DNA from: Macrostomum lignano
Lineage: Eukaryota
Length of the DNA: 64,000 nt
Direction of reading: 5' to 3'
Assembly: GCA_002269645.1 (NCBI GenBank)
Contig: NIVC01001310.1
Span: 284,209-348,208 of the forward strand
Part shown: in pieces, positions 1 to 44,446 of the stretch
Layout of the letters: the number at the start of each line of letters is the position of its first letter
Position numbering within the stretch: position 1 is the first letter of the stretch
The notes under the pieces: model-generated
The model's input: the letters and a program-made list of their open reading frames with translations, nothing else
Told to the model about the DNA's origin: nothing
Databases searched by the model: none
Translations under genes and position numbers: made by a program

Positions 1-605
1 CAAGAAATAAACTGAACAGCCTGGCCCAATAGAAGACTAATGGCAGTCCTAGAGCGGCAAAGTTCTGCAATATAAACATGCAAATGGCTACTTGCTTAAT
101 TGGTTCAAGCCCGTATAGTTATTTAAATAGTATGCAACGAATTGCCAAAACGTGCTCAATTCTCGTAACAGAATTTGTTGCCAATGAAGAAGCAAACCTT
201 TCTATAACAAACAGTGAATAAAGTTAATGAAAAAATTGAGGGCAATATCAAAAAAGCTGAAATTGGCAGAAAGGAAGAAATGACCAAGTAAGGTAATGAT
301 GGAATTATATAAAAGAAGTCTATAATAAAGTTCTGCTCCGCCCAATAAAAAAAGAAAACAAAATTAAGTTGTAAAGCTTTGGTTTTATTGTCCAAAACTG
401 AGCACGTAAAGAAATTGTATGAAGTATAGAGTAGCAAATATACCCCGTGCGCCACAAGTGGACGCGAAGTTCGAACGATGTTATGAAGCTACTAAGCATA
501 CACTCGTACGTAAAGGTACTTGTAGATTGCAGGTAGTAATTTCCATGTATTAATTTGATTAAAAATTCATTTTACGATCTGTCGTATCACACGCAATACT
601 TAGCT

Positions 606-4051: not shown

Positions 4052-7177
<3,126 letters not shown>

Positions 7178-20360: not shown

Positions 20361-20997
20361 CTAATTGAAGTCCACTAGACCAGGAAAAGCGGTTCCAAAT
20401 CTTGCGACAGCATTTTCACCTCCATAGTTATCTGGTTGAAGAGAGCTCCACAGACTTTTGTCCAAGGAAATGTTGCAGGCGACCCAGTGCCAACCTTCTC
20501 CAGGCTCCAGACTGCCAGGTTTTTGGTACCCACCAAGCCAGAACTGACCTCCAGGGCAATATGTCTTGTACATGATGTTCACTCTGCTCATCTCTGCGGT
20601 GTCAGTAACATCCGCCATGATCACCAGACCGCTCTCCGACTCACATTTCTGTCTACTCATCGACCAGTTCCTTGAACCGAAGTGCAGCCTGTACTTTGCT
20701 CCGCACAGGTCGTCTCCGTAGCCAGACGGACACAGCGCGCCCGCCTCGAGTCCCGGCTGCTGCTTCACAAACACCCGGCCTCTCCTGGAGCAGCCGCAGT
20801 CCCTCACCGACTTGCTGCACTTGTCGAACACGAACAGCTGGCACGGACCGTCAGCCAGGCTGAACGCCTGGCAGCGCCGGTTTCTGGTGCACATAGCCGC
20901 ACATTTAATTTTGTTTGTTATATTTGAGTGAATGTCCGTATAGATGCTTTTTACGCACAAACTGCCGTGAATCGAGTGAAACGCTTGCTCGTTGAAG
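20361..20997 (-). CDS. Exon encoding a PAN/apple-like domain plus a C-type lectin-like domain (5' exon not located)
   Basis: KCAAMCTRNRRCQAFSL..CQL is PAN-like. NWSMSRQKCESE...FWLGG...WHW...LWSSLQPDNYGGEN is a CTLD with WIG-like and QPD motifs. An acceptor ACTAG lies at ~20998-21002. Confidence 0.8.
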
Positions 20998-21429
20998 CTA
21001 GTTGTCAAAAAACTGATCACAGAGTATAAATTGAATTAGCAATGTGATTTGTAAGCTCGAAAACATTGCAGGGGTAGCTTAATCTACTACCGTCTTCTTT
21101 GTCTTTGAAATGAATTGAAAATTCTATCCTAGATTCTGCCTATCTAACCAGTATTTATAATAATTTTCGCCTTGCATTGCCATTCTGAACAGCTCTTGGG
21201 GTAACATTAGTTGTGTTTGAGCTGCCAATACGACGCTTTCAATTGCGAGCCTGCATCCAGTCTAAAGTGGATTGCAATTGTACGTTTTTTCGTTGAATTG
21301 CGCATAAAATAAAAACACCTGGGGCAGTTAAAAAGTTTATGAATAAATACTTGACGAGCCAAACCGTTTTCTGACATTCAAATCTACTAATGAAAAGGCC
21401 TATTCAGGAGGTGCTGGTCGACATCACGG

Positions 21430-21710: not shown

Positions 21711-21994
21711 CTCGAGAGAAGTGCTGAAATTTGAAAAGTCAAACGTTCCATTTTTTAGATCGTAACAGTTATGCATTGTATCTAGAAATAATACGTAAAG
21801 TATGAAAATGTGTTGAAGAAACATTCGTGAGACAGTGTGCTTGTGCTGCGTTGTGCATATGGTTTTGTCATGGACGATGATTAATGTAAGTCACTCGTGG
21901 CTTCACCACTCGTGAAAAATGAATACCACCATGTTAGTTCCTCATAGCATACAAAAAAACCACGGAACGAGCAGAACCTAGACTAGGACACAAT

Positions 21995-22346
21995 TTCCAA
22001 GAAAAGGACGCTTATATCACATTAATATTGCAGAGATTTCTAGGAATCAGAATAAGAGTACTTCTGTTGGAATTTCTTGGAAATATTTGCCTACCATGTA
22101 AGTTAGATATCAAAGTGTACTTGGTAAGCTTTCAACTGCATCAGACGTTTGACCATCGTAAGTTGATACACTAAACGCGAATTCACTTTTTTATCAAAAC
22201 TACGCTCGTAACAACTTGCTTTAAAACATCACGCAAGCAACATGTCATTAGTAGAGCTCTTACTGCGGGAAAAGTACAACGAAAAAAACACTTTTACGCT
22301 CGTACGAAACAGTTTGTGGAAATCTGCAGAAATTTATTTCTAGGAA
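21995..22346. promoter_or_regulatory. Cluster of four STAT-type GAS motifs (TTCN3GAA) upstream of Mx copy 1
   Basis: TTCCAAGAA 21995-22003, TTCTAGGAA 22038-22046, TTCTTGGAA 22074-22082 and TTCTAGGAA 22338-22346, about 330-680 bp upstream of the ATG at 22678. Confidence 0.6.
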
Positions 22347-22677
22347 ATTTGAGAGCTTTTCTTGGTATGCACATTTTAGATCTACGCTCTTTCGCGCATG
22401 TACACTTATGAGCGGAGTGTATAGTGTAGCTATACTGATAACAAATACGCTGATCAAAAACGTACACTCTAGAAAAAAACGTGCAATGATGTTTCAGTGC
22501 ACAGATGCGAGTGTATATATGTACGCTTTCCTGCCCACTGTTCTTATTCTCACTGCATTTTTAGGGTTTATACATTTTACCCACTCAGTATTTCGTCTAA
22601 TTTAACTTTGAATTTCAAAAACTCCATTAAGTTTTGCGATTCTGTACAGTTGACATAATAGCTCGTATCAACCTCAA

Positions 22678-25600
22678 ATGTCATCGCAGAGTTCGTCACA
22701 CCATTCGTCAAGTTCGTCAAAGTCAAGTTCGTCGTCAAACAAGAGGGTATTACTACTACTTCTACTACTACTACTGCTGCTATTATTACTATTATTAATA
22801 CTACTACCATTACTATTACCGAAAGCACGAACATACTTCTACTCCCACAGCAGCACAAGTCCTCTGATGGCCCGACCCCGGCGAAACAGGTCAAGAGCCC
22901 CGATGCCACTGAGACTGTGTCGCTAAACGCTGCTGCAGACGCCTCCAAGCCGTTCACTCCAGCGCTCAGTCAGCAGTATCGCGAGCGAATCCGGCCAGTG
23001 CTGAACAGCATCGATCGTCTCCGGTCGCACGGCCTACAAAATGAGCTCCGCCTGCCCACAGTAGCCGTTGTGGGCGACCAATCGGTAGGCAAATCCAGCG
23101 TGCTGGAGGCCATCTCGGGCGTGGACTTGCCGCGCGGTACCGGCATTGTGACTCGCTGCCCGCTGCAGCTGAGCATGCGCTCAAAGCCGACTGGAGACTG
23201 GACTGGTAGGATTAGGTGAGCATTTTTATTCTATTAATTCACGTCCTTCGAACTCCTTTCTGAATTTACATTAAATACACATAAAAATATCTTGCAAATA
23301 TTAGCAAATTTTGACAGATTTGACAGCGCGGGTATTTGTCTTGCTAAAAAACATTTTCTCAATTACACTGCATGATATGAAATACCAGCAATGAGGCTAT
23401 TCTGCCCTTTCTACTGACCCCTGAGTACATACAAGAGCGCCAGTAATGTACACAGGCACGCAACTCCCACACACTCACACAAGGTGCACAGGGGCCCCGC
23501 ACGGACAACCAACTGGCCAATATTTGTCCCAAATGAATGTGGCCGCACAGGCCCGAAATGAACTAGCTTCCTTTCTGCTGAAAACTAGCAGGCACTTTAG
23601 ATTGAAATGAAAAAATCAAAGTTGAAAAGTAAAGGGGATGTGAACTTGGGATTCAAAAATGGAGCCCGAAACATTCTGTCCCGATTTCTCTACGCTAATC
23701 CTTTCATTTGGAGCCAAAAAGCTGCCGTTATGCAGAAAAAACCCGGCCACTTTAGCATTTGAGGATCCCTATGAGGAGAAATGGGATTAATGGGGAAGAA
23801 TTCATGTAAACTTCAGGTTCCAGAATGGAGCATGAAGCATTGGGTCCCGGTTTCTCTACGCCAATGCCTTCATTTGGAGCTTCAAACGCTTAAAAAACGA
23901 GATGACCATGATATACGCTTCCCTTTTGGCACTTTTCATGTTTGTAGGAAGAATAGGAGCGATAGTAATGTTATTTAATGCCCCCATTATGTTGTTTCTT
24001 AATAATGTTTATGTTATCTTCCCCACCCCAGCTCTCATTGTGTTCCCCCGTTTTGCTGGAGACTTAAATAGCGTCAAGGGGGGTTTGTATCACACATATT
24101 AGACCGACGATTTCTACCTCGACGAAGCGGAGGTTAACCCGAAGTTTTGAGACGGAGGGTGGTAAACATCATTTTCGCACATTTATATCGTGTCAAAGGT
24201 GCAAAGCTCCCCCACAACCATTTCTCCCCATAGAGATCCCCAAATGCTAAAGTGTTCGGGTTTTCGCATGACGGCAGCTTTTTGGCTCCAAATGAAGGGA
24301 TTGGCGTAGAAAAATCAGGACCGAATGTTTCGAACTCCATTTTGACTCTTAAGTTCACATCCCCTTTGTAAACTGCTGCTGGGCAGCACATCATTTGCCT
24401 TCGTCGAGAAAACGTTCTTCCAGTACTCCAGGCTGCAAAATTACAAAGATACGTGGGTTAAAGTATTTCAAAAGTCATTCCAATGTCTTCAAAGTTAACC
24501 AGCTGTAATTTCACAAGTGTCGTTTCCTGCTCTCCTAAGAGCCTTTTCTGACAAGACACCCTTCCCCGACAACAGCTACCAAAATCGCAAGGGCGAGCAC
24601 GTCGAGCGTGAAATATCGAAAAAATGTGAAGTAGACGAAATGGTGCGCAAAGTACAAAACGAAATCACTGGCGACTCGAACGGCGTATCTACGGAGCAGA
24701 TCGACCTGACCATTGAGAGCGCGGATGTGTCCGACCTCACCCTGGTTGACCTGCCCGGCATTGCCAGGTACTCTGAGAAGAATCCGAAGATCAACGAGGT
24801 TACCAAGCAGCTGATTCTGTCTTACATCAGCCAGGACCAGGTGATCATCCTGGTTGTTGTACCCTGCAGCGTGGACATCGAGACAGTGGAGGCCATTGCT
24901 CTAGCCAAACAGGTGGACCCAGGGGGCACCAGGACGATCGGAGTCCTGACTTGCCCGGACCTGACCAACCCTGGCAGCGAGGAGGACATCAAAGCCATCG
25001 TCAACAACCAAGGCAGAGTGCGACTGCACAAAGGCTTTGTCATGGTGAAATGCCGCAGCCCCAAGGAGCTCAGGAACAACATTAGTCTGAGCGAGGTGGC
25101 CAAAATCGAGGAGGATTATTTCAAAAACGATCCGCACTTCAGCCAGCTGCCAAAGGATATTGTTGGCACAAAGACGCTGGCAGAGAAGCTGACAAATGAG
25201 TTGTTCAAGGCAGTGGCTGCGGGCATTGAGACTCTGGAGGAGAGTCTGAAGGTAAGCCAACTGAGAAAGTCAGCTCCACGGGGGAGTTGGCGAACTTCGG
25301 TCCTCAAAGCCTTTCCATTCGGCCTTTAAATACTTTAAATACTTTATATGCAATCCGGCCCACTCAAGGTTTTGTATTTTCTCAGCTCTTCTCCACTCTC
25401 CCTTCTTCTCTTCACTCTCCCATATTTTCTCTTTCCTCTCTCTTCCCTCTCTTTTCTTTTTTAATCTCTCCCTCCTATCACCTATAATCGACTAATCCTG
25501 TCTCTTCTGATATAAGACTTGATGTGGCTGAATGCTTTCAGGTCAGATTTCTATTTGGCGCTTGTTTTCATTTGCGCATGCGTGCTTAGGGTCAACCGAA

Positions 25601-27199
25601 TGTACACGTAATCGTTTTGATTTGACAGCTCGCAAACTGAACTAAATTAAAAAAATTATTTCTCACAGAGCAAGCTGAAGGACTACGAAGAGGAGCTGAA
25701 AGACCTGGAGGACAGTCTGTGCGAGACAGACAGCGACAAGAGAGCCTACCTGATGCGCAAGCTGCAGCAGTTTGCCTCAAAAGTACACGCCGCCACGGCC
25801 AGTCCAGAAGATGAGCGGGACGCATTCGCCACGGGCAGCTCCAGCAGTCTGTACAGCAGCTGTCTGACTAATTGTTCGAGCTTTGGCTACTCTGTGAGCA
25901 GGAGCCAGCCTGGTGAGCTGTTTATTCATTACGAGTTTCCTGGCGCACGGGGCGCTTCTATGCGAAATGCAGTATAGATTTTAGTTGTAAATACTTGTAA
26001 CAACCATGTATCATAATCGGCGACTTTTTTAGCACAAAGTCCATGCACATTATAAAATTTCATTCTTTATGCTAAACTGGCCACGCGAACTCGACGTTGC
26101 TTGACGTCCATGGCGAACATTTTATTTCAGCCTGGATCATTGACTACTCAAAAAAAGTGCCCAATGGTGTGTCCGACGAGGTGCAGCTTAGAAGAGGACG
26201 CGAGCTTCCGACTTTCACATTTGTGTTCCCTGTTGTTCAGAAGATTGTATTCGAAGAATATTTGCCAAAAATAGAATACCTGGCGAAGTGGCTACTCGGT
26301 GAGGTGCAGTCTCAAGTTACTAAATCGCTTGAAAACCTGACCGAAAATTGTTTCAAAGCGTTTCCAAGGCTGCTGCTACTTGTGAAAGAAACTGTTGTCA
26401 AGGCGATCGAAGCCCAAGAGGCTGAGTGTCGTGCAGACCTGGCTAAGCTGATTGCACACGAGCGTCGCTTGTTCACTCAGGACAGTCAGTTTTCGGAAAA
26501 ACTGCGTTACGTTACAGAGCAACAAAAGGAGTTGGCTAAGCAACCTGTTCCTCCGTAAGTAACTGCTTTAATTGGGCGTTTACCGAAGGATTTTAGGAGC
26601 TGACGCCCCTTGTTCCTCGCACTCAAAGAAGCGTCCCTAGCTACTACGAAACTCCTGGCTATGCCTCTCACATTTGGATCTAAAAACACTACAAATGGAA
26701 TAGTTATTATATATCCTATGTAAAAGAGGAGGTTCCATTTTTCAGCCCAACCCTTTTTTCGGGTTTCGGAGCCCCGGCAGCATCACAGCCGATCCGAATC
26801 TCTCGCGAGCCTCAAGCAAGCCCAACCACAAGGGCGTCTCAAGGGGGCTTCAAGAGAGCCGAGCCTCAAGTGAGCCGAGCCTCAAGCGAGCCGTCACATG
26901 AGGAGCAAATTCGCCTGGGAACCAAAGCCTACCTGCTGCTGGCCTGTCAGCGCATCTCGGACACGGTGCCAATGTCGGTGCTGTGCCACATGCTCGACGG
27001 CGTGGCCACAAAGCTGGTTGCCGAGATAACTCGACTGTTTGCCGGCGGCAGCCACCAGGTGGACATCCTGGATCTGCTGCGAGAGAAGGAGGGCAGGCAG
27101 CGGAGGAGGCGCTACCTGATTCAGGCTGCTTGTCAGATGCGCGAGTCGCGGAAGGAGCTGCAGAGCGCCAAGCAGAACCGCATGCTGCTAGAGGACTGA
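22678..27199 (+). CDS. Mx: Mx-like dynamin-family GTPase, copy 1 (intact, 743 aa); exons 22678-22746, 22851-23215, 24576-25251, 25669-25912, 26131-26554, 26746-27199
   Basis: G1 [10 protein letters not shown]2 [14 protein letters not shown]3 DLPG, G4-position TCPD, stalk motif RGRELPTF and [18 protein letters not shown]. There is no PH or PRD domain. All six exons join in phase with GT-AG introns (2232 nt). Confidence 0.92.
23631..24367. mobile_element. Non-autonomous element with ~155-bp terminal inverted repeats in Mx copy 1 intron 2
   Basis: The left arm starts AAAGGGGATGTGAAC (23631-~23785). The right arm (~24215-24367) is its reverse complement at roughly 85% identity. A partial third copy lies at ~23820-23885. 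Confidence 0.75.
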
Positions 27200-28795: not shown

Positions 28796-28980
<185 letters not shown>

Positions 28981-29505
28981 ACACTTAGGCATACTGATGC
29001 CACCCTTCGTAACATGTCAGTAGTACGAAGGGTGCACATGAAACTAGCTCTTACTGCGAGAAAAAAAGCACAGAAAAAACAGGTTTCCAGGAAATAGTTC
29101 ACACGCACATCTGCAGGAATTTTTTGGAAATTTTTGGCGCAGTTCATTATATGTACATGGATGAAAAGGGTGTACAGTTTATCATTATCGTTCCCTGTAG
29201 AAATTCCAACGGACAGTGGTGTATCAGTGCTTAAATGGGAGTGTGAATATGCACTGTACTGCCCGTTGTTCTTATTCAAAATATTTTGCCCTGCCGGCAA
29301 TTTGTTTTCTCTGACTTTGAGTTTCTAAAACGCAAGTCATTTTTTGGATTCTGTATAGCAGACGTACTATACAAACCTGAAATGTCATCGCGGAGTTCGC
29401 CAAATTTGTCGTCAAACAAGCGGGTAAATCATTTTTGTAGTGCTTAGCCATAAAATTTACCGCGCTACATTTGAGTAAAAGACTACTACTTTTCCACTGC
29501 TACTG

Positions 29506-29540
<35 letters not shown>

Positions 29541-30367
29541 GTTACTACTACTAGCAGTACGAACAATACTACCTTTTCTCCCACAGCAGCACAAGTCCTC
29601 TGATGGCCCGACCCCGGCGAAACAGGTCAAGAGCCCTGATGCCACTGAGACTGTGTTGCTAAGCGCTGCTGCAGACGCCTCCAAGACGTTCACTCCAGCG
29701 CTCAGTCAGCAGTATCGCGAGCGAATCCGGCCAGTGCTGAACAGCATCGATCGTCTCCGGTCGCACGGCCTACAAAATGAGCTCCGCCTGCCCACAGTAG
29801 CCGTTGTGGGCGACCAATCGGTGGCAAATCCAGCGTGCTGGAGGCCATCTCGGGCGTGGACTTGCCGCGCGGTAGCGGCATTGTGACTCGCTGCCCGCTG
29901 CAGCTGAGCATGCGCTCAAAGCCAACTGGAGACTGGACTGGTAGGATTAGGTGAGCATTTTTATAGTTCTATCAATTCACCTTCTTAGAACTCCTTTCTG
30001 AATTGACATTAAATGCACATAAAAAATATCTTGCAAATATTAGCAAATTTTGACAGATTTGACAGCGCGGGTATTTGTCTTGCTAAAAAACATTTTCTCA
30101 ATTACACTGCATGATATGAAATACCAGCAATGAGGCTATTCTGCCCTTTCTACTGACCCCTGAGTACATACAAGAGCGCCAGTAATGTACACAGGCACGC
30201 GACTCCCACACACTCACACAAGGTGCACAGGGGCCCCGCACGGACAACCAACTGGCCAATATTTGTCCCAAATGAATGTGGCCGCACAGGCCCGAAATGA
30301 ACTAGCTTCCTTTCTGCTGAAAACTAGCAGGCACTTTAGATTGAAATAAAAAGTCAAGTTGAAAAGT

Positions 30368-31060
30368 AAAGGGGATGTGAACTTAAGAGTCAAAATGGAG
30401 CCCGAAACATTCGGTCCCGGTTTCTCTACGCCAATCCCTTCATTTGGAGCCAAACAGCTGCCGTTATGCCGAAAACCCGACCACTTTAGCATTTGAGGAT
30501 TCCTATGAGGAGAAATGGGATTAATGGGGAAGAATTCATGTGACTTCAGGTTCCAAAAAGAAGCATGAAGCATTGAGTCCCGGTTTCTCTACGCCAATGC
30601 CTTCATTTGGAGCTTCAAACGCTTAAAAAACGAGATGACCATGATATACGCTCCCCTTTTGGCACTTTTCATGTTTGTAGGAAGAATAGGAGCGATAGTA
30701 ATGTTATTTAATGCCCCCATTATTTGTTTCTTAATAATGTTTATGTTATCTTCTCCACCCCAGCTCTCGTCAAGGGGGGTTTGTATCACACATATTAGAC
30801 CGACGATTTCTACCTCGACGAAGCGGAGGTTAACCCGAAGTTTTGAGACGGAGGGTGGTAAACATCATTTTCGCACATCTATATCGTGTCAAAGGTGCAA
30901 AGCTCCCCCACAACCATTTCTCCCCATAGAGATCCCCAAATGCTAAAGTTCGGGTTTTCGCATGACGGCAGCTTTTTGGCTCCAAATGAAGGGATTGGCG
31001 TAGAAAAATCAGGACCGAATGTTTCGAACTCCATTTTACTCTTAAGTTCACATCCCCTTT
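30368..31060. mobile_element. Paralogous TIR element in Mx copy 2 intron 2
   Basis: The same AAAGGGGATGTGAAC...GTTCACATCCCCTTT inverted arms as at 23631-24367, with a small internal deletion. Confidence 0.75.
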
Positions 31061-32831
31061 GTAAACTGCTGCTGGGCAGCACATCATTTGCCTTCGTCGA
31101 GAAAACGTTCTTCCAGTACTCCAGGCTGCAAAATTACAAAGATACGTGGGTAAAGTATTTCAAAAGTCATTCCAATGTCTTCAAAGTTAACCAGCTGTAA
31201 TTTCACAAGTGTCGTTTCCTCTCTCCTAAGAGCCTTTTCTGACAAGACACCCTTCCAACCCCGACAACAGCTACCAAAATCGCAAGGGCGAGCACGTCGA
31301 GCGTAAAATATCGAAAAAATGTGAAGTAGACGAAATGTGCGCAAAGTACAAAACGAAATCACTGGCGACTCGAACGCGCGTATCTACGGAGCAGATCGAC
31401 CTGACCATTGAGAGCGCGGATGTGTCCGACCTCACCCTGGTTGACCTGCCCGGCATTGCCAGGTACTCTGAGAAGAATCCGAAGATCAACGAGGTCACCA
31501 AGCAGCTGATTCTGTCTTACATCAGCCAGGACCAGGTGATCATCCTGGTTGTTGTACCCTGCAGCGTGGACATCGAGACAGTGGAGGCCATTGCTCTAGC
31601 CAAACAGGTGGACCCAGGGGGCACCAGGACGATCGGAGTCCTGACTTGCCCGGACCTGACCAACCCTGGCAGCGAGGAGGACATCAAAGCCATCGTCAAC
31701 AACCAAGGCAGAGTGCGACTGCACAAAGGCTTTGTCATGGTGAAATGCCGCAGCCCCAAGGAGCTCAGGAACAACATCAGTCTGAGCGAGGTGGCCAAAA
31801 TCGAGGAGGATTATTTCAAAAACGATCCGCACTTCAGCCAGCTGCCAAAGGATATTGTTGGCACAAAGACGCTGGCAGAGAAGCTGACAAATGAGTTGTT
31901 CAAGGCAGTGGCTGCGGGCATTGAGACTCTGGAGGAGAGTCTGAAGGTAAGCCAACTGAGAAAGTCAGCTCCACGGGGGAGTTGGCGAACTTCGGTCCTC
32001 AAAGCCTTTCCATTCGGCCTTTAAATACTTTAAATACTTTATATGCAATCCGGCCCACTCAAGGTTTATGTATTTTCTCAGCTCTTCTCCACTCTCCCTT
32101 CTTCTCTTCACTCTCCCATATTTTCTCTTTCCTCTCTCTTCCCTCTCTTTTCTTTTTTACTCTCTCCCTCCTATCACCTATAATCGACTAATCCTGTCTC
32201 TTCTGATATAAGACTTGATGTGGCTGAATGCTTTTAGGTCAGATTTCTATTTGGCGCTTGTTTTCATTTGCGCATGCGTGCTTAGGGTCAACCGAATGTA
32301 CACGTAATCGTTTTGATTTGACAGCTCGCAAACTGAACTAAATTAAAAAAATTATTTCTCACAGAGCAAGCTGAAGGACTACGAAGAGGAGCTGAAAGAC
32401 CTGGAGGACAGTCTGTGCGAGACAGACAGCGACAAGAGAGCCTACCTGATGCGCAAGCTGCAGCAGTTTGCCTCAAAAGTACACGCCGCCACGGCCAGTC
32501 CAGAAGATGAGCGGGACGCATTCGCCACGGGCAGCTCCAGCAGTCTGTACAGCAGCTGTCTGACTAATTGTTCGAGCTTTGGCTACTCTGTGAGCAGGAG
32601 CCAGCCTGGTGAGCTGTTTATTGATTACGAGTTTACTGGCGCACGGGGCGCTTCTATGCGAAATATAGATTTTAGTTGTAAATACTTGTAACACATACTT
32701 GTAACATTAAATACTTGTAACAAGCTTGTATCGTAATCGTCGATTTTAATCTTGCTTTTGTTTTAGCACAAAATCCATGCACAGTTTAAAAAATGTTTCA
32801 CTTTATGCTAAACTCGTCGTTGCTTGACGTC

Positions 32832-35800
32832 TGATGTGGATGGACTCTTATTAGTATATCCATGTCTATGGCCCTGACCTCCACCGCCTACGTGCTAAGA
32901 GGCAGGGCGATTAAATATTGTTTTAAGCTCCTTGGCTCGCCACCAGAGCAGCCCAAATTACATTATACCAAAGCATATAACATGGCATCGCAAGCAGGCA
33001 CTGAAACCGTGGGCTAAAGCTTCTGGCAAAGAAACCACAAGATACCCCCAAAGCAGCAGCGCTCTACGTCGGCATCGCCTTCAAGGCAGAAGCCAGAAAA
33101 GTCGGAACGATCATCAGCAGCATCAGCAGCATCATCAGCAGCATACTCTTGAGGCATACTTCGATTCAGTTAGCATCCAGCACGAGGAATCAGACAGCAT
33201 CCACGTAACTCGGAAGAAAATGGCAGCTCGACGAGCTTGCATGTTGAACGCAGTTACATCTGCTACCTTCTCGAAGTATAAGAATCTACCTCTGACGGAT
33301 CAACAATTCAAGGACCCAGAGATTGTCATGAATTTCATCAGAGATCACGTACTCGGACAGGTTAATATCATCGTAGAGAGGAACAGGTTCTGGAAACGGC
33401 AACAAAATGACGGAGAAAATTTTAACGACTGTCATGCAATTGAGGGACCTGATGCGAACATGTAAGTTCTGTAAGCATTCCAACGACCTACTGAGGGATA
33501 AAATTGTGCTATGAGTACGAAATCCGGAGACAATCAAGCATCTATTAGCACAACCAGATCTCTCTCTCTCGCTGACGCGCTGACAATATGTAGATCAGAG
33601 GAAGCCTGTGAGATCCAAAAAATGAAATCTGCACAGCTTCACAGGTGTCCATAGTGCGCAAACACCGAGGAAAAACTCCAGGTGGGGCTCGATCAAAGAC
33701 TCCAGAAGCAAAGAAATGCACTGCCTGTGGTAAAGGGCGACATCAGCGCTCAGAATGTCCCGCCAAGGACAAGAAGTGCTTTAACTGCGGTCGCATTGGA
33801 CATTTTGGTTCCATGTGCCGGTCCAGTCGCAGCACTGGTCATCCGGATAAAAGGCGACCACCGAGAATCTCAACTTTGGTTTCTACACTGGAACCCGCAA
33901 CCCCAACAGTAGTAGTCTCGATAAATGGGGAGCAGCTGGAAATGATGCCCGATACGGGATCCAATATCGATCCAATCCGAGAATGCGATTGCAAAAAGCT
34001 CCGCATCCGTGTTGCACAACTAAGGCATGACGCCATATTTCCTAAATCAGCCAGTGGACAGTTCATTAAGAGTGACGGCAATTTCTCCGCCACAATAACG
34101 CTGAACGGGAAGCACGCAGCGACAAGGATTCATGTGCTGAAGAACTTGGTCGCGCCAGTGCTGTCCTGGCAGAGCTGTAGAAAACTGGGAATCATCCCTA
34201 AAGAGTTTCCAAGTCAGATAAACCAGATAACTCAGGTTCTGACGAATGACGGAAGAAAACATACAGAACTGGATTTGATCCAAGAATTCCCGAGGGTCTT
34301 CGACGGAGTAATTCGGCCGATGAAGGGCGAAAAATTTTCGATTGTGCTCAAAATAGGACGCGATCCCATTTTCCGTGAAGACGCCACGCCGGCTATCACT
34401 GCCACTGCATGAAAAACTTAAAAACGAACTCGATGCCTTGGAAAGACAGCAAATTATCTGCAAAATAACAGAGCCGACACCCTGGTGCGCTCCAATAGTC
34501 GTAGCCCCGAAGAAGGGCACTGACCGAATTCGTCTTTGCGTAGATTTTAGAGAGATAAACAAATACGTTCTGAGACCTCGATACTAATCACCAACACCAC
34601 TGGAAGTTGTGGCCAGCACCAATGTATCCAACGCAGAATGGTTTACAGTTGTTGATGCATTGAAAGGATCCCATCAAGTACCACTCCACGAAGACAGTAT
34701 GCCACTGACAACATTTATTACTCCTTATGGAACATACATGTTCAGAATGGCACCTTTCGGGATCAGCTCTATCTCAGAATATTACAACAGGAGACTGGAT
34801 AGTGTTCTACAGGGCTTGAAAGATACTCGCCACATTGTGGATGACTGCATAATCGCAAGCGCCGACTACGAAAGCCAAATCCAAGCTGTTCGCGAATTTA
34901 TTTATCGGTGTGACGAGAGTGGAATATCATTGAATAAGAAAAAATTTGTCTTCGCCAAGAAAATGTAAAGTTTGCTGGATTTATCCTTACACTAAAGTGC
35001 TATCAGGTGGACCCTGACATGACAGCAGCCATTGCTCAATTCCCTGAGCCATCAAATGTTACAGAATTACGCGCATTTATGGGCCAAGTGAATCAAATAG
35101 GACCATTCACAGATTCGATCGCAGAATGTACCTCGATATTAAGACCTCTACTGAGCGCGAAGAATTCATTCATCTGGAACGAGGAGCACCAAAAAGCCTT
35201 CGATAAGGCACGAATCCATCTGTCTAAAGTCCCATCATTCGCATACTACGATCACACGAAGCCAACCGCACTGCACACCGACGCATCAAGGTTGAAGGGA
35301 CTCGGATTTGTTCTCAAGCAGCAACAACCTGACGGCGCCTGGCGAATGATTCAGGCAGGATCACGGTTTCTGGCTGACGCGGAGACGCGATATGCTATGA
35401 TCGAGCTCGAGTTTCTAGCAATTGTGTGGGCTTCGCAAAAATGGACTCTCTTGTTTTTTAAGGACTCGATTCATTTCAAATCGTGACTGACCACAAGCCA
35501 CTTATTCCGATATTAAACGGCTACCAACTAGACCAAATCGAAAACCCGAGGTTGCAGCGCCTTCGTGCCAAGCTTAATCGCTACAACTATGAAGCAAAAT
35601 GGGTACGAGGTAAAGACAATGTATATGCCGATGCACTATCAAGAGCTCCGATTGCAAATGCAACTGAAGAAGATCAGATTGATGAGAATCAAGCTCTAAG
35701 TAGTGTGAATTTGTTGACTATGGTAATGGAAGATAGGGAAATTGACTTTAACATGAAGAGAATACAAGAACACGTAAAGAAGGACACAGAAATGCAAGAG

Positions 35801-37256
35801 CTTATCCAAGTAATAGAGAATGGATTCCCGAACGATAAAGCTAATCTTCCAGTTAATCTAAGACCGTACTGGCACATTAGACATAAGCTTGTCGTCTAAA
35901 ACGGAGTCGTTCTCAATGGATGCCGTTGTATCATCCCTAAAGAAATGCGAAAAGAAGTTTTGAGAACACTACATTCAAGTCACCAAGGTGCTACTAAGAC
36001 CAAAGCAAGAGCAAGAATGGTCGTCTATTGGCCCAGCATGGAACGTCAGATCGATGACACAATAAAGCAATGCAATGCATGCCAAGAAACCCGTCCAAGT
36101 CAGGTCAGAGAACCGATGTTGCCGAGAACTACACCAGCAAGGTGCTTCCAGGAAGTTCATGCTGACTTTTGTGAACACCGCGGCAGGCAATTCCTAATGA
36201 TAGTGGACGGATACTCTGGATGGATCAACATATGGAACTTCGGACAAAATGCTCCGGTTTACAAGCTGATTAACGCGTGCCGTGAGCTATTTTGTCAGAC
36301 AGCTGTACCGGAATTGTTCTGGTCAGACTCAGGTCCTCAGTTCGAGGCCAGCGCATTTGGTAACTTTTTGAAGAGATGGGAGTCGAGTCCAGATTCTCAT
36401 CCCCATACCACCACCAAAGCAACGGGAGAGCCGAAGCGGCAGTCAAGTCAGCCAAAAAGATCATCAGAGGATCGTGGGATTATCGCAACAATGACATAAA
36501 CAAGGACAAAATGGCGGAAGGAATACTTATCTATAGAAACACACCTATGTATGACGGACGCATTCCTTCTATTATGCTGTATGGACACCCAGCAAGAGAG
36601 ATTCACTCCTGCTCATCGAAGAAGCTTTAATCCCGAATGGTACAACACGATTAAACAAATGGAGGACACAGCATCAGAAGTTCACGAGGCTGTGGAGCAA
36701 ACAAGTCCAAGAGAAGCCTCGATGGAATCCGAATAGGGTCGACTGTAGTTCTTCAAGAGCCAACAACGAAACTGTGGCAACGGAGAGGAGTAGTGGTAGA
36801 GGTCGGAAAAACACCGCGACTACCTGGTAAAGTTGGCGAGCGGCAGAATACTACGGAGAAACCGCATTTACATACGGCCAACATTGCCACTGACCGCCGA
36901 CAACTGGAAAATGACAAAGACGACAAACGGCGAAAGTACAAGACGTACGGAGACGACTTGTACTACGACGGCCAATCAACCAAGCAAGGAGAAACCTCGA
37001 AGTAGCTCGAGAGCAACGAAGGGCATCCCGCCCGCCCGACTCCAGTACAGTAGGCTAGGACATCCAAAAGTTAATTTTGTCGAGTGATAAGGACACTGAA
37101 TTGAAAGGGGAGATGATGTGGATCGACTCTTATTAGTATATCCATGTCTATGGCCCTGACCTCCACCGCCTACGTGCTAAGAGGCAGGGCGATTAAATAT
37201 ATTGTTTTAAGCTCCTTGGCTCGCCACCAGAGCAGCCCAAATTACATTATATAACA
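32832..37256 (+). mobile_element. Full-length Ty3/Gypsy LTR retrotransposon, Mag-like; LTRs 32832-32982 and 37114-37256, 5-bp TSD ACGTC
   Basis: TG...CA LTRs of ~150 bp are near-identical. PBS TGGCATCGCAAGCAGG at 32983; PPT GAAAGGGGAGA at 37103-37113. ACGTC flanks both ends (32827-32831, 37257-37261) and is single at the empty site in copy 1. Gag has tandem knuckles CTACGKGRHQRSEC/CFNCGRIGHFGSMC, followed by PR (DTG), RT (VDD), RNase H (TDAS) and IN (HHCC, D-D-E) in Gypsy order, with several frameshifts and stops. Confidence 0.95.
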
Positions 37257-39567
37257 ACGTCCATGGAAAACTCTCTATTTCAGCCTGGATCATTGACTAC
37301 TCGAAAAGCGTACCCAATTATGTGTCGGACGAGGTGCAGCTTAGAAGAGGACGCGAGCTTCCGACTTTCACATTTGTGTTCCCTGTTGTTCAAAAGATTG
37401 TATTCGAAGAATATTTGCCAAAAATAGAGAACCTGGCGAAGTGGCTACTCGATAACGTGCAGTCTAAAGTTACTAAAACGCTTGAAAACCTGGCCGAAAA
37501 TTGTTTCAAAGCGTTTCCAAGGCTGCTGCTACTTGTGAAAGAAACTGTTGTCAAGGCGATCGAAGCCCAAGAGGCTGAGTGTCGGACAGATATGGCTAAG
37601 CTTATTGCACACGAGCGTCGCTTGTTCACTCAGGACAGCCAGTTTTCGGAAAAACTGAGATACGTTACTACACAATGGCAGGAGTTCCTAGCGACACATC
37701 GTACTCCTCAGTAAATAATTGCTTTGAATAGGCATGGTGCCTTCGGACCTGGAGCCCGTTGGTGCAGCAATGTAAAATTCAGTCCATCCTAATACAAGAT
37801 CCTTAACCATTTCTTGCAGGCGGCTGCCAGCACAAGCCGCCTCAAGCGACCCATCAAACGAGGAGCGAATTCGCCTGGGAACCAAAGCCTACCTGCTGCT
37901 GGCCTGTCAGCGCATCTCGGACACGGTGCCAATGTCGGTGCTGTGCCACATGCTCGACGGCGTGGCCACAAAGCTGGTTGCCGAGATAACCCGACTGTTT
38001 GCCGGCGGCAGCCACCAGGTGGACATCCTGGATCTGCTGCGAGAGAAGGAGGGCAGGCAGCGGAGGAGGCGCTACCTGACTCAGGCTGCTTGTCAGATGC
38101 GCGAGTCGCGGAAGGAGCTGCAGAGCGCCAAGCAGAACCGCATGCTGCTGGAGGACTGAGACAAGCGCCTCTATTTGAGATGAAAAATGGAAGACTGTTC
38201 ATGCGAACACGAATTTACCTAAATTTATTTTAACTATCTTTGAAGTGACCACAACTAATACGAGTATACCTTTGAACGGAGACTAACAAAAGTACTTTTG
38301 AATGGTAGCTACATGCCACCTCGACCCCGACTGAACAATTTGATACTTTAGAAATAACCCTGACGACCCCAACTACAAGCGTATCTCGGAACTCTTGAAC
38401 TCTGGTGGAACGGAAAACTTTATTAGAAATGTCTCAAAAATACCCGAAAATGTTTATCAACTACTTACAGTACTCCTATTCATCTGCTTGTATCCATTTA
38501 TAACCAGTTTTTAACCAAGTCTTGTAAGCTTTGACGAAGTTTACAAGCAGCATCAATTTTTTCCTGTTTTGTCACAGCCTCAGTTTTAATTAGTATTGCA
38601 TAAATTCCATTTCGCAAAAAATTTGGTAAGTAGTCGTAATAAATGACCCTACAAGCATGATCGGAATCTTTTTAGTCATAAATGTTTAATTAAAATTCGC
38701 ACTTGAGCACATTCTCTTCTCTTTCCTACTTAAAGTAGCCGCTTATAGAAGATAATGAAATTAATTATCGCTAAAACAAAATCTGATCAATTTTAAATTA
38801 TTAATAAATACACTTACTTCAGTTTTGCGATAGTTGCGCATATGTCCCGAGGATCCCGAAATTATGGTATGAAAAGCTATTGTTATCATTAGTTATTTCC
38901 CTCAAAATTTAGGGCTAGTTTTTTATTCAAGCTACGAACGCCAACTGGAAGCAAGCAAGTACAAAGTACAAAAATAGACGCTAGGCTAGACATGAATTGC
39001 TTTATTGTCACGGCAATTCTACGGTTTTTCCATGGATTTTCCGACACAAAGTTCCCTTTTCTGCCGACAACTGAGTGCATTGCAACAATATTGGCATGTT
39101 GTACTAAGGTATATCAAAATTCAGGTATGCGCTCGTAATTTTTGCTTGCGACAATTTTGGACAGTCTTCGATAAGTAACGCATAAAAAAGACAGGCTTAG
39201 ATACACAAGAATTCAACTGCAATTGATAGTTGGTGTATTTACAAATTTTACAGATCCTATGATGAAGCATAAAAAGCAGCTGCGCTTGTATGGGGCCAAT
39301 TGTTAAATGTCTTTAACAAAACTTTTTTTCTGAATAAATATCGCATTATAAAAAAATGAAATTTACAATAAATTACGGAATTAAAAACATCCGAATCGAA
39401 ATGCATCTGTACACATGATCGTTTTGCTCGGTGGAGCAGCATGACGAACCATAAATACATTCATGGCTACTATTAGACATGGATTCGCATTGATATCTAG
39501 AAAAAATATCTACAATGAATATTCGTGCTTTCTGTCTTTGTTTCGTAGCTGATAGTTCAGCGCCTAG

Positions 39568-40341
39568 TCAATAGCAGCATTCCCTCGGCTCGGACACTTG
39601 CCGCAGCGTCCGCTTCATCCGGTCCATATCGGCCATGGTCTTCTCGCCGAACCGGTAGATTCGCTTTTTGCTGCGCTTCCCAGTGTCCAGGTAGTCGAAA
39701 TAGCCTTTGGACTTCTCCCTGCGAACTCTGTGGGGAAGAATGGTTGTTGTTCATCTATTCATGCTTCATTCTTCTCATTAGCAGCAAAGCCAGAAGTTCG
39801 GTTCATTACCTCATCGCTCTGGCAAACGTGTCGTAGGTAGCTTTCTTGTTGCCCTTGATTTTTTTCCACAACAGTCCCATGGTCTCCGTGTCGAGCGTTT
39901 TAAAATGGCGACATTCGCCAGACGTCTCGCGTCCGTTCTCGTCGCAGAAGGCGAGAATCCGTCGAAGATCCTTTGTCTTGTCGCCGTATGTCGAATTAAG
40001 CAGAATGGTGAGGATGACCTCGTGCACTTTAAGCTTCGAAGACATTTCTTCCGGCTTGCAGTTGCTGCTTCTTTCTGCAATAAGTTGAAAAAAAGGAATT
40101 AATGAGTCTACTCGTAAATTCCCTTGCATGTCTTTTGAAATACCATGAAGCTCAAAATAGCTTGCGCACCAATGACTTCCTTGATGTAGTCCACCATTTC
40201 GTCAATCTCTGCCTCGCGAGCTGAAGAAAACTGCTGGAGCGATTCGCAGCTCTCGAAGCCGCTGCTCACAGTCGTTGGACTTGGCGGTTCATCTAGCAGT
40301 TGTTGCCTTTGGGAATTCTCCTTGAGTAGAACTTGCCGCTG

Positions 40342-40378
<37 letters not shown>

Positions 40379-40794
40379 GGCTCAAACATGGGAACGTTCG
40401 GCAGGTTGGTAGCACTCCCACGACCAGTTCCATCAGCGTCCTCCATCAGCTCGTCAAGAAGCTCCTTAGTCTCCTTGTCACAAGAAACTCCTAGTCCACT
40501 AGTATATTGTCGCTCTCCAAGCGCCTCGCACTGTTCACGCGCAACCGAGCTGCTCAGCTGAACATTTTCATCACCTTGCAGTTGGCTTTTGTCTACACGT
40601 TCCTGCAGAAAATCTAGCAGCCAGCTGTTATCAATCTCAGGTACACATAGTTGCTGCTCAGGCCCTTGGAACACGAAGCTTTGCCATCTGAAACTGTCCT
40701 CATGGTTCGGTAGAACGCCAGCCGGCAGTTCGCTGAGATCGATTTCCATAATATCGAAGTCAAACGCGTTGATCTCTGTAGTTTTTTGGCTCAT
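39568..40794 (-). CDS. Divergent ETS-domain transcription factor A (349 aa); exons 40794-40170, 40074-39810, 39727-39568
   Basis: An acidic, polyQ-containing N-terminus precedes LKVHEVILTILL...GLLWKKIKGNKKATYDTFARAMR|VRREKSKGYFDYLDTGKRSKKRIYRFG, matching the ETS pattern LW..K....Y....RA.R...R..Y.F. Phases are consistent (1050 nt). Confidence 0.8.
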
Positions 40795-42535: not shown

Positions 42536-44446
42536 TCAGTCATCAGTCATCGACAGAAGCATCCTTAGTTCATTAACCAGCCGCAGTCCATTGCAACCAA
42601 AGCGAATCACTCTGCTGCTGGCATACTTAGTCGCTGAATGGCTTTCCACGACGCCAAAGTCACCGCTAGAAGATGACTTTGCTTTGGCCAATCTACAGAA
42701 ATATGTGTCGATGCATTACATTTATATGCAGAACTTGCAATTTATTGTATCAAAGGTTTCTTTACAGTGTCATTTTTCCTTGAGCTTTCTAAGGACTTAA
42801 GATCTCTGTGTTTTGAGTCCATAAAAACTTTAGGGCTTAAATATATATTTTTTAATGTCAACATATTGACACTCAAGTACTCCGACACCGACACAACCGA
42901 CACCGACACACCCGACACACCAGACACAAACATACCCGACACAAGCACACCCGACACAAAAACACCCGACACAAACACACCCGACATCTGAAACCAACAC
43001 ACCCGATACAGACACAACCGACACCGCACATCCGACACTGACACACCCGACACCGACACACCCGACACCAACACGCCCGACGCAAACACACCCGAAACCG
43101 ACACACCCGACACCGACACACACGAAACCGACATACTCGGACACCGAAACACTCCAACAACACACTCCGACAACAAAAATCCGACACCAACACACTCCGA
43201 CACATCGACAATTAGCTCACCTAATTGCCCTCGTGAATGCGGAGCAGGCATTCTTGCTCACTGGTCTTCTATTGACCTTCTGCCAGAGCATCCCAGCGGT
43301 TTCTCTATCGAGAATTTTGAAGTACTCAATAGAACCGCTCCGTTCTTGACCGTTGACGTCGCAGAACACTAGGATTCGACAAAAGCATTTACGACTACTC
43401 AGCAGCACAATTAGTATGAAGTGCAAAACGTTCGGACGATTTAGCGCCGCAAAGCCGAATAGCTTTCCCGAAACAAGTTCGATTACGAGTAGAATAAGTA
43501 CTTTTATCAACGAATCAAGGACGTCATGCTGAATTTAATCAATAAAACTTTACCCACCCATTTTCTCTCTAATGTGCGTCGCCAAACGATCCAGAGTTTC
43601 TTCTCGAGCTGTCATCGTGTAACCCGGTGGCTGGTCATCGGTGGCAATGCTCACAGATTCCCAGGTCGAGGTAGCCGGTTGGTTTACTGCCGATCGGCCG
43701 CAACTTTGGATGATTGGTAGATTTGGAAGGCTGGGCAGCTGGTCGACGGCAGTTTGACAGGTGACTGGTTGCTGCACTGTGGTAACACTGATAGGGAATG
43801 CTTGAACACCGCAGTTAAACTGTTGCACTGTGGTAACACTGATAGGGAATGCTTGAACACCGCAGTTAAACTGTTGCACTGTGGTAACACTGATAGGGAA
43901 TGCTTGAACACCGCAGTTAAACTGTTGCACTGTGGTAACACTGATAGGAATGCTTGAACACCGCAGTTAAACTGTTGCACTGTGGTAACACTGATAGGGA
44001 ATGCTTGAACACCGCAGTTAAACTGTTGCACTGTGGTAACACTGATAGGGAATGCTTGAACACCGCAGTTAAACTGTTGCACTGTGGTAACACTGATAGG
44101 AATGCTTGAACACCGCAGTTAAACTGTTGCACTGTGGTAACACTGATAGGGAATGCTTGAACACCGCAGTTAAACTGTTGCACTGTGGTAACACTGATAG
44201 GGAATGCTGAACACCGCAGTTAAACTGTTGCACTGTGGTAACACTGATAGGGAATGCTTGAACACCGCAGTTAAACTGTTGCACTGTGGTAACACTGATA
44301 GGGAATGCTTGAACACCGCAGTTAAACTGTTGCACTGTGGTAACACTGATAGGGAATGCTTGAACACCGCAGTTAAACTGTTGCACTGTGGTAACACTGA
44401 TAGGGAATGCTTGAACACCGCAGTTAAACGGTACTATTGTCTGTTC
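42536..44446 (-). CDS. Divergent ETS-domain factor B (5' end and one acceptor unresolved; repeat exon frameshifted as assembled)
   Basis: Exon 44446-43558 carries 17-aa repeats then REETLDRLATHIREKM. The ETS exon ends at 43221 (GMLWQKVNRRPVSKNACSAFTRAIR). The last exon 42692-42536 contains SRVIRFG. Intron positions match A, C and D. Confidence 0.65.
42880..43205. repeat. Degenerate (ACACCG/ACACCC)n low-complexity tract in an ETS-B intron
   Basis: Imperfect GACACC/ACACCC repeats. The V/C/S/G-rich and T/D/P-rich ORFs here are artefacts. Confidence 0.85.
43772..44428 (-). repeat. 51-bp minisatellite (~13 copies) encoding VQQFNCGVQAFPISVTT
   Basis: Unit GCAGTTAAACTGTTGCACTGTGGTAACACTGATAGGGAATGCTTGAACACC. 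Three units are 50 nt (deletions at ~43947, ~44099, ~44208). Confidence 0.95.

What the first reader, a model, noticed from the sequence alone, without database searches (positions are those of the whole stretch)
21995..22346. Four STAT-type GAS sites upstream of Mx copy 1, with site turnover in copy 2
Four perfect TTCN3GAA sites occur in ~350 bp, where my rough expectation at local base composition is ~0.1. Three fit TTCYNRGAA. In the alignable copy 2 region, the 22338 site is degraded (TTTTTGGAA, ~29121). A different perfect site TTCCAGGAA (29085-29093) is present where copy 1 has TTTGTGGAA. Reciprocal gain and loss would fit selection to keep STAT responsiveness.
Basis: partly seen in the sequence, partly recalled or inferred. 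Interest (0 to 1): 0.7.

Follow-up and report, generated by a model that had tools for sequence, protein, structure and literature searches.

The report
STAT-like site cluster upstream of flatworm Mx
Four copies of a STAT-type binding motif really do sit 340-680 bp upstream of an intact Mx antiviral GTPase gene of the flatworm Macrostomum lignano, more often than chance predicts. This makes a reasonable but untested candidate STAT-responsive enhancer; the claimed selection-driven site turnover in the second gene copy is not supported.

Summary
The four TTCN3GAA sites are at the stated coordinates. A cluster of four in 352 bp is rare: P about 0.005-0.01 window-wide and 6e-4 for the 929-bp upstream region. 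All four fit the narrower TTCTWGGAA, so all four, not three, fit TTCYNRGAA. Sites 1 and 3 are arms of an imperfect inverted repeat, so there are about three independent events, not four. The window is Macrostomum lignano contig NIVC01001310.1. Copy 1 is the intact six-exon, 743-aa Mx-clade gene Mlig021727g2. No ISRE, kappaB or N4 GAS motif lies upstream. The turnover claim fails. Promoter homology with copy 2 starts only at 22250, so three sites have no counterpart. The promoters are about 65% identical while the gene bodies are 96% identical. Optimal alignments do not place the copy-2 site opposite TTTGTGGAA, and one site in 400 bp is unremarkable. A second M. lignano contig keeps all four sites but is 98.5% identical there, so it is uninformative. 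Three other M. lignano Mx paralogue loci have no such cluster. The transcription start, the presence of STAT in this species and inducibility are all untested. Planarian stat5 and mx1 homologues are co-induced by dsRNA, which makes the idea plausible and testable by transgenesis.

The parts
21995..22003 (.). GAS-type site 1, TTCCAAGAA (reverse complement TTCTTGGAA); centre is -679 from the ATG
   Evidence: it is part of the left arm of the inverted repeat
22038..22046 (.). GAS-type site 2, TTCTAGGAA, within the 12-nt palindrome ATTTCTAGGAAT; centre is -636 from the ATG
   Evidence: it shares the 11-mer ATTTCTAGGAA with site 4
22074..22082 (.). GAS-type site 3, TTCTTGGAA; centre is -600 from the ATG
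   Evidence: it lies in the right arm of the inverted repeat. The 15-mer AATTTCTTGGAAATA recurs at 53140-53154
22338..22346 (.). GAS-type site 4, TTCTAGGAA; centre is -336 from the ATG and -172 from the TATA-like element. It is the only site inside the region alignable with copy 2
21984..22093 (.). Imperfect palindromic element of about 110 bp. Its arms (21984-22014 and 22053-22093) carry sites 1 and 3, site 2 lies between them, and each end is flanked by TA. It is an inverted duplication or a MITE-like foldback
   Evidence: 16/20 + 16/20 matches between arms; DNA fold z = -2.46; no other copy in the window or in 56 kb of other M. lignano loci
22313..22321 (.). One-mismatch near-site TTTGTGGAA; a second near-site, TTCTTGGTA, is at 22359-22367
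22514..22520 (+). The only TATAWAW match in the 929-bp upstream region (GTATATATG context). It is a candidate core promoter, and it is degraded in copy 2
   Evidence: inferred, with no transcript data
22638..22649 (+). GATTCTGTACAG, a 3' splice-acceptor-like block 28 nt before the ATG, conserved in copy 2 as GATTCTGTATAG. It is a possible 5'-UTR intron end or SL trans-splice site
   Evidence: the M. lignano trans-splice acceptor motif is YTNCAG (PMC8629364); inferred
22678..27199 (+). Mx copy 1 (Macrostomum lignano BOX15_Mlig021727g2, PAA69582.1), intact, 743 aa. Exons: 22678-22746, 22851-23215, 24576-25251, 25669-25912, 26131-26554, 26746-27199, all GT-AG
29085..29093 (.). The single perfect TTCN3GAA (TTCCAGGAA) in the copy-2 promoter. 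It aligns to copy-1 22294-22308, which is not a GAS or near-GAS site
29121..29129 (.). TTTTTGGAA, the degraded counterpart of site 4 in copy 2. The GGAAATTT half is kept and the TTC half is lost through a 4-nt indel
29382..38159 (+). Mx copy 2. In this contig it has three 1-bp frame-breaking indels: one in the P-loop codon near 29823 and two in exon 3. A young LTR retrotransposon sits in intron 4 (LTRs at 32832-32967 and 37114-37251)
   Evidence: the indels are absent from the second contig, L081
28796..28979 (+). Perfect (CAGA)46 microsatellite lying just upstream of the 5' limit (about 29046) of copy-2 promoter homology with copy 1

Best explanation
The region 21995-22346 holds four copies of one specific palindromic motif, (T)TTCTWGGAA(A). 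This is a STAT5/6-type N3 GAS element. It lies in the proximal upstream region of an intact Mx-clade GTPase gene of the flatworm Macrostomum lignano.

The most likely reading is a multi-site enhancer bound by a dimeric factor, most probably the flatworm STAT. On pathway activation, for example a dsRNA or viral response, this factor would raise transcription of Mx copy 1 from a promoter near the TATA-like element at 22514.

Shown: the sites, their excess over chance, their shared extended sequence and the intact gene.
Inferred: that STAT binds them, that the gene is inducible, and where transcription starts.

The copy-2 differences are ordinary divergence of an old, poorly conserved promoter, not evidence of selection.
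For: Excess over chance:
- Window-wide P is 0.005-0.011 and local P is 6e-4; Poisson against the window's site density gives P = 0.0012.
- TTC is the only N3 palindrome that forms a cluster of at least 4 in non-repetitive DNA of the window.

Motif specificity:
- All four sites fit TTCTWGGAA. Only 2 of the other 27 sites in the window do. The chance that the N3 spacer fits is about 0.074 per site.
- 4 of the 8 GGAA cores in 21950-22400 have a TTC half-site at exactly GAS spacing, against a chance of 0.016 each. This argues for a dimeric palindrome reader rather than monomeric ETS or NFAT factors.

Position and gene:
- The sites lie within 700 bp of the ATG of an intact gene. In M. lignano, up to 2 kb upstream of the TSS sufficed for faithful reporter expression (PMC5730564).
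- The gene is a true Mx.

Biological plausibility:
- In the planarian Schmidtea, stat5 and mx1 homologues are co-induced in a RIG-I-like-receptor-dependent dsRNA response. Those authors proposed a JAK-STAT link (PMC8797187).
- No ISRE, kappaB or N4 GAS motif is present that could offer a competing known input.
Against: - There is no binding, expression or TSS data.
- Sites 1 and 3 are related by an inverted duplication, so there are about three independent events. A cluster of at least 3 occurs in about 12% of window-wide shuffles.
- The narrower-motif and half-site tests are post hoc.
- The only comparative sequence (L081) is about 98.5% identical across the promoter, so keeping all four sites says nothing about constraint.
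- Three other M. lignano Mx paralogue loci have 0-1 sites within 6 kb upstream, so this is not a family-wide feature.
- Other words are equally or more enriched in the same region: AGTGTA x7 and TACGCT x5.
- STAT presence in M. lignano itself was not verified.
- About 30% of genes in this species are SL trans-spliced, so the true promoter could lie elsewhere.
- Spacings of 43, 36 and 264 bp do not match the roughly 20-bp tandem-GAS spacing I recall for STAT tetramers (my own knowledge).
Confidence: 0.4

Rival explanations
1. No function. The cluster is a by-product of local sequence history in a repeat-prone genome: an inverted duplication or MITE-like foldback that happens to carry the word, plus two chance occurrences. 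The motif match to STAT is then coincidental.
For: - Sites 1 and 3 lie in TA-flanked inverted-repeat arms (16/20 + 16/20 matches) with site 2 between them, and the element folds better than shuffles (z = -2.46).
- Sites 2 and 4 share an exact 11-mer.
- The region is generally word-redundant: AGTGTA x7, TACGCT x5.
- Counting three independent events, the window-wide probability is about 0.12.
- There is no evidence of conservation, and other Mx paralogues lack the cluster.
Against: - No second copy of the 110-bp element was found in the window or in 56 kb of other M. lignano loci.
- Outside the motif, the flanks of sites 2 and 4 are unrelated. This pattern is expected if only the motif is being retained.
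- The local probability of at least 3 sites is still about 0.004.
- TTC is the only N3 palindrome that clusters in unique DNA.
- The position directly upstream of an immune effector gene is what a real element would show.
Confidence: 0.3
2. The sites are real cis-elements read by a factor other than STAT. Candidates are a GGAA-core factor (ETS family, NFAT/Rel-homology) binding as a dimer, or a lineage-specific factor recognising ATTTCTWGGAAAT.
For: - Every site has one GGAA half. WGGAAA is enriched upstream: 5 observed against 1.3 expected, P = 0.01.
- The GGAAAT half is the part kept in copy 2, at 29089 and 29125.
- The motif extends beyond the STAT core by conserved T/A flanks.
Against: - The non-GGAA half (TTCT) is invariant at exact N3 spacing in all four sites. 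This is not needed for monomeric ETS or NFAT binding.
- The ETS core MGGAAR is not enriched (2 observed against 1.6 expected), and no kappaB-type site is present.
- TTCN3GAA is the defining STAT dimer site from insects to mammals (established knowledge).
Confidence: 0.15
3. The sites are functional but serve another transcription unit: the unannotated PAN/lectin-like ORF on the minus strand (20361-21066, TATAAATA at 21149-21157), or both genes as a shared bidirectional enhancer.
For: - GAS sites are palindromic and independent of orientation.
- The minus-strand ORF has its own TATA box and a signal-peptide-like start about 870-1220 bp from the cluster.
- A further TTCGTTGAA lies at 21289.
Against: - The cluster is much closer to the Mx ATG (336-679 bp).
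- The minus-strand ORF is not annotated in the deposited record.
- Its ATG is out of frame with the long ORF, and it gives no significant Pfam hit.
Confidence: 0.1

Closest known systems
Teleost Mx promoters with predicted GAS elements (for example the gilthead seabream mx promoter: one ISRE plus four GAS; the Senegalese sole promoter: three ISRE plus one GAS)
   Same: Several TTCN3GAA elements lie in the proximal promoter of an Mx-clade GTPase gene. Paralogous promoters differ in how many sites they carry (PMC12580493).
   Different: Fish promoters always include at least one ISRE and respond to type I interferon. Here no GAAANNGAAA core exists in 929 bp, the animal has no known interferon, and nothing has been tested functionally.
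Mammalian MX1/MX2 promoters (ISGF3/ISRE-driven interferon-stimulated genes)
   Same: The orthologous gene family is an antiviral effector, and a STAT-containing complex is the presumed activator.
   Different: Mammalian Mx induction works through ISRE bound by STAT1-STAT2-IRF9, not through GAS homodimer sites (established knowledge). This promoter has GAS-type sites only.
Invertebrate JAK/STAT target promoters (Drosophila STAT92E TTCN3GAA clusters, as in Socs36E, vir-1 and Tot genes)
   Same: Clusters of N3 TTC...GAA sites lie upstream of stress or antiviral genes in an animal without interferon (my own knowledge of the Drosophila literature; not checked here).
   Different: The target here is an Mx gene, which insects lack. 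The flatworm STAT's binding specificity and upstream pathway are unknown.
Planarian dsRNA response (Schmidtea mediterranea prlr1-dependent induction of stat5 and mx1 homologues)
   Same: It is the same phylum and involves the same two players, STAT and Mx. The JAK-STAT link was explicitly hypothesised (PMC8797187).
   Different: That work shows co-induction only, with no cis-regulatory analysis. It is a different species, and orthology of its mx1 to Mlig021727 was not examined.

Membership tests
GAS (gamma-activated-sequence-type STAT dimer site) | Palindromic core TTC-N3-GAA | tested here: met
   Four exact matches at 21995, 22038, 22074 and 22338. All four fit TTCYNRGAA and TTCTWGGAA.
GAS (gamma-activated-sequence-type STAT dimer site) | Occurrence above chance in a regulatory position | tested here: met
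   P is 0.005-0.011 window-wide and 6e-4 locally. The sites lie -336 to -679 from the ATG. The result is weakened by the non-independence of sites 1 and 3.
GAS (gamma-activated-sequence-type STAT dimer site) | Bound by an activated STAT dimer | not testable with these tools
   This needs EMSA, ChIP or DAP-seq. STAT presence in M. lignano was not verified; a planarian STAT homologue exists (PMC8797187).
GAS (gamma-activated-sequence-type STAT dimer site) | Confers pathway-dependent induction on the linked gene | not testable with these tools
   No expression or reporter data are accessible.
GAS (gamma-activated-sequence-type STAT dimer site) | Evolutionary conservation of the sites relative to their flanks | tested here: inconclusive
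   All four sites are retained in the second M. lignano contig, but that promoter is about 98.5% identical overall. Copy 2 keeps none of them intact at a homologous position. No other species was reachable.
Mx subfamily of dynamin-like GTPases (the linked gene) | Dynamin-type G domain + middle domain + GED, without PH or PRD domains, and closer to Mx than to dynamins | tested here: met
   Pfam finds Dynamin_N, Dynamin_M and GED only. Scores are 279-283 bits to human MX1/MX2 against at most 149 bits to dynamin-1/3 or DRP1.
Mx subfamily of dynamin-like GTPases (the linked gene) | Intact open reading frame | tested here: met
   Copy 1 has six GT-AG exons and 743 aa, identical to PAA69582.1. Copy 2 in this contig has three 1-bp frameshifts that are absent from contig L081.
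Interferon-stimulated gene promoter (ISRE type) | ISRE core GAAANNGAAA(CT) | tested here: not met
   There are zero matches in the 929 bp upstream of copy 1 and in the 402 bp upstream of copy 2.
MITE / foldback transposable element (for the 21984-22093 element) | Terminal inverted repeats with a target-site duplication, and many copies in the genome | tested here: inconclusive
   TA-flanked inverted arms are present, but no other copy was found in about 120 kb of M. lignano sequence examined. The whole genome could not be searched.

The most novel reading that the evidence does not exclude
In a flatworm, an Mx antiviral effector is wired directly to a STAT through GAS homodimer sites with no ISRE or IRF input. 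Such an interferon-independent STAT-to-Mx axis could represent the ancestral bilaterian wiring that vertebrates later rerouted through ISGF3/ISRE.
Probability: 0.2. Interest if true: 0.6.

Novelty: new member of a known kind. Interest (0 to 1): 0.35.

Why it matters
Flatworms have Mx and STAT homologues that rise together in a dsRNA response, but no cis-regulatory link between them is known. No interferon is known outside the vertebrates.

This is a compact, sequence-defined candidate STAT enhancer in front of an intact Mx gene. It sits in the one flatworm with routine transgenesis, and reporter regions of up to 2 kb upstream work there. That turns the question "is invertebrate Mx a JAK/STAT target?" into a simple reporter-plus-RNAi experiment.

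If the sites prove inert, the locus still shows how a gene-converted tandem pair can keep near-identical coding sequence behind very different promoters.

Tried and rejected
Searches that gave nothing useful:
- **Word-indexed protein searches for taxon and orthologues:** the Mx exon gave only a 53% Macrostomum hit. The MFS exon and the integrase piece gave nothing.
- **Full HMMER search:** this identified the species and the paralogues.
- **Metagenome scan for Mx relatives:** it returned only dynamin-like genes at 41% identity or less, probably from microbial eukaryotes, and no usable orthologous promoter.
- **Exact-protein look-ups:** the exon ORF and P0001 were not on record.
- **Rfam and tRNA scans of the window:** no hits.
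- **Literature on M. lignano JAK-STAT:** none found.

Ideas rejected or downgraded:
- **Allelic or homeologous contig L081 as a conservation test:** rejected as uninformative, because the promoter is about 98.5% identical.
- **"Copy 2 is a pseudogene, so it is under no selection":** downgraded. The three frameshifts are absent from L081 and could be allele-specific or errors in the long-read (PacBio-based) assembly.
- **Recent tandem duplication as the origin of the four sites:** rejected. No direct repeat of at least 15/20 matches exists in 21900-22680.
- **ISRE, kappaB, HSE, N2 or N4 GAS, AP-1, CRE, E-box as alternative inputs:** none is present upstream.
- **STAT-tetramer spacing:** not met; the spacings are 43, 36 and 264 bp.
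rejected by three alignment parameter sets.

Full report
**The observation**

The window holds 31 such sites, against a dinucleotide-shuffle mean of 23.

I tested the cluster against several null models.
- A cluster of at least four within 352 bp anywhere in the 64-kb window appeared in 0.5% of 2000 whole-window dinucleotide shuffles.
- It appeared in 1.1% of 1000 shuffles confined to 1-kb blocks.
- At least four sites in the 929-bp upstream region appeared in 0.06% of 5000 local shuffles.
- As a look-elsewhere control I scanned all 64 palindromes of the form XYZ-N3-Z'Y'X'. Nine reach four or more in 352 bp. Eight of them do so only in tandem repeats, A/T runs or the AT-rich 7-10 kb stretch. 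TTC is the only one that clusters in unique DNA.

So the excess is real, though of modest statistical weight.

**Refinements to the observation**

- All four sites, not three, fit TTCYNRGAA. All four also fit the much narrower TTCTWGGAA, usually with T before and A after. Only two of the other 27 sites in the window fit it.
- Of eight GGAA cores in 21950-22400, four have a TTC half-site at exact GAS spacing, where chance gives 0.016 per core. This points to a palindrome-reading dimer rather than a monomeric GGAA binder. Both of these tests are post hoc.
- Sites 1 and 3 are not independent. They sit in TA-flanked inverted-repeat arms, 21984-22014 and 22053-22093, with 16/20 + 16/20 matches, and site 2 lies between them. 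This roughly 110-bp element folds better than shuffles (z = -2.46).
- With three independent events, the window-wide probability rises to about 0.12. The local probability of at least three is about 0.004.
- No direct repeats underlie the cluster. No other copy of the element was found in the window or in 56 kb of other loci from the same genome.

**What the locus is**

A full HMMER search found a 743-aa protein that is 100% identical over exon 3. Its cluster members are Macrostomum lignano proteins: PAA69582.1 (BOX15_Mlig021727g2), on contig NIVC01001310.1 of GCA_002269645.1.

My independently built model has six exons, all GT-AG: 22678-22746, 22851-23215, 24576-25251, 25669-25912, 26131-26554 and 26746-27199. 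It translates to exactly that protein.

The gene is a true Mx. It scores 279-283 bits to human MX1/MX2 against at most 149 bits to dynamins and DRP1. Its domains are Dynamin_N, Dynamin_M and GED, with no PH or PRD domain.

The site centres lie 336-679 bp upstream of the ATG. They lie 172-515 bp upstream of the only TATA-like element, at 22514. Upstream of copy 1 there is no ISRE core, no kappaB site and no N2 or N4 GAS. Other words are also enriched there: AGTGTA seven times and TACGCT five times.

**Copy 2 and the turnover claim**

Identity between the two copies is a mosaic:

| Copy-1 segment | Identity to copy 2 |
|---|---|
| 22752-26002 (gene body) | 96% |
| Exon-5 region | 89% |
| 3' end | 94% |
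| Promoter plus exon 1 (22453-22711) | about 65% |

Recognisable promoter homology reaches back only to about 22250 in copy 1 and 29046 in copy 2. Just upstream of that limit, copy 2 has a perfect (CAGA)46 array and unrelated GC-rich DNA. The three distal sites therefore have no counterpart at all. The pattern fits old, diverged promoters behind a gene-converted body.

The 22338 site does face TTTTTGGAA in copy 2, through a 4-nt indel. However, three scoring schemes all place the copy-2 site TTCCAGGAA opposite copy-1 22294-22308, not opposite TTTGTGGAA. One perfect site in 402 bp is about what chance gives. Nothing here requires selection.

In this contig copy 2 also carries three single-base frameshifts, one in the P-loop codon and two in exon 3. 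A young LTR retrotransposon sits in intron 4. A second M. lignano contig (NIVC01001656.1, L081) has the same tandem pair and the same insertion, but gap-free exons 2-4 and an intact P-loop in copy 2. The frameshifts may therefore be allele-specific or assembly errors, and I do not rest the argument on pseudogene status.

**Comparative evidence**

- L081 keeps all four sites, but its promoter is about 98.5% identical to the window's, so this says nothing about constraint.
- Three loci for other M. lignano Mx paralogues, about 50% identical in protein (Mlig022940g2, Mlig002592g2 and Mlig002592g1), have 0-1 TTCN3GAA in 6 kb upstream and no cluster. The feature is therefore specific to this locus.
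- No orthologue from another species could be reached.

**Context from the literature**

- In the planarian Schmidtea mediterranea, stat5 and mx1 homologues are among seven dsRNA-response genes up-regulated on ADAR knockdown. The response depends on a RIG-I-like receptor, and the authors proposed, without testing it, that JAK-STAT signalling mediates it (PMC8797187).
- Teleost Mx promoters are described with ISRE and GAS elements, including one seabream promoter with one ISRE and four GAS (PMC12580493).
- About 30% of M. lignano genes are SL trans-spliced, with acceptor motif YTNCAG (PMC8629364).
- M. lignano has transgenesis, RAMPAGE data and a genome browser. Regions of up to 2 kb upstream of the TSS sufficed for faithful reporter expression (PMC5730564).

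**Verdict**

The sites are real and non-random, and they make up one specific STAT5/6-type palindrome in front of an intact flatworm Mx gene. My estimates are:

| Explanation | Confidence |
|---|---|
| STAT-responsive enhancer of Mx copy 1 | about 0.4 |
| Neutral by-product of local duplication | about 0.3 |
| Real element read by another factor | about 0.15 |
| Element serving the neighbouring minus-strand ORF | about 0.1 |

The selection-driven turnover story is not supported. As a class this is a new member of a known kind: predicted GAS clusters in Mx and other STAT-target promoters. Its value is as a cheap, well-defined test of a STAT-to-Mx link in an animal without interferon.

Noticed in passing
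window 22257-22267 and 29048-29059: CTCTTACTGCG (copy 1) and CTCTTACTGCGA (copy 2) match positions 5-16 of the published M. lignano spliced-leader sequence. They are the only SL matches of at least 11 nt in the window. They form the best-conserved block of the two Mx promoters and sit at the 5' limit of promoter homology. About 0.2-0.8 such matches are expected by chance, so the meaning is unclear.
   Followed up: partly
window 22752-26002 vs 29482-32693, and 22453-22711 vs 29181-29415: There is a sharp identity step between the two Mx copies. The gene body is 96% identical and the promoter plus exon 1 only about 65%, with the step falling in the (TAC)n microsatellite of intron 1. This looks like a gene-conversion tract bounded by a microsatellite.
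   Followed up: partly
window 32832-37251: An LTR retrotransposon with gypsy-type domain order (zf-CCHC, protease, RT, RNase H, integrase) lies in intron 4 of Mx copy 2. Its ~136-nt LTRs are about 99% identical, but its internal frames are broken. It is shared with contig L081. It was examined piece by piece only.
   Followed up: partly
window 29823, 31337 and 31378 (approx.) vs L081 15936 onwards: Three single-base indels break the frame of Mx copy 2 in this contig. They are absent from the other M. lignano contig, so they are either allele-specific decay or assembly errors.
   Followed up: yes
window 20361-21157 (minus strand): An unannotated ORF has a TATAAATA box, a signal-peptide-like ATG at 21066, and cysteine-rich PAN-like and lectin-like sequence. 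The ATG is out of frame with the long ORF, across a T6 run. Pfam matches are weak only (PAN, E = 0.16-0.6).
   Followed up: partly
window 39806-40794, 43217-44400, 47986-48865 (minus strand); 51462-52094 (plus strand): Several neighbouring ORFs look like divergent paralogues, but their relatedness was not tested. 39806-40129 gives a sub-threshold Pfam Ets hit (22.7 bits; curated cut-off 26.9). 43217-43510 looks ETS-like by eye but has no Pfam hit. The DNA at 43773-44429 is a 51-bp tandem repeat (12.9 copies, 99%), read in frame by the overlapping ORFs.
   Followed up: no
window 53140-53154 and 50462-50470: The only other TTCTWGGAA sites in the window. The one at 53143 shares the exact 15-mer AATTTCTTGGAAATA with site 3, which suggests an extended motif or a shared repeat fragment.
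   Followed up: partly
window 22113-22515: AGTGTA/TACACT occurs seven times (0.55 expected, P about 2e-6) and TACGCT(C) five times in the Mx copy-1 upstream region. TACGCTCGTA occurs twice, 95 bp apart. These are unexplained repeated words and may be other cis-elements.
   Followed up: no
window 605-1341, 4613-5424, 5406-6787, 28796-28979: Large, near-perfect tandem arrays: a 48-bp unit x15, (TATC)n for about 800 bp, a 273-bp unit x5, and a perfect (CAGA)46. This fits the repeat-rich M. lignano genome.
   Followed up: no
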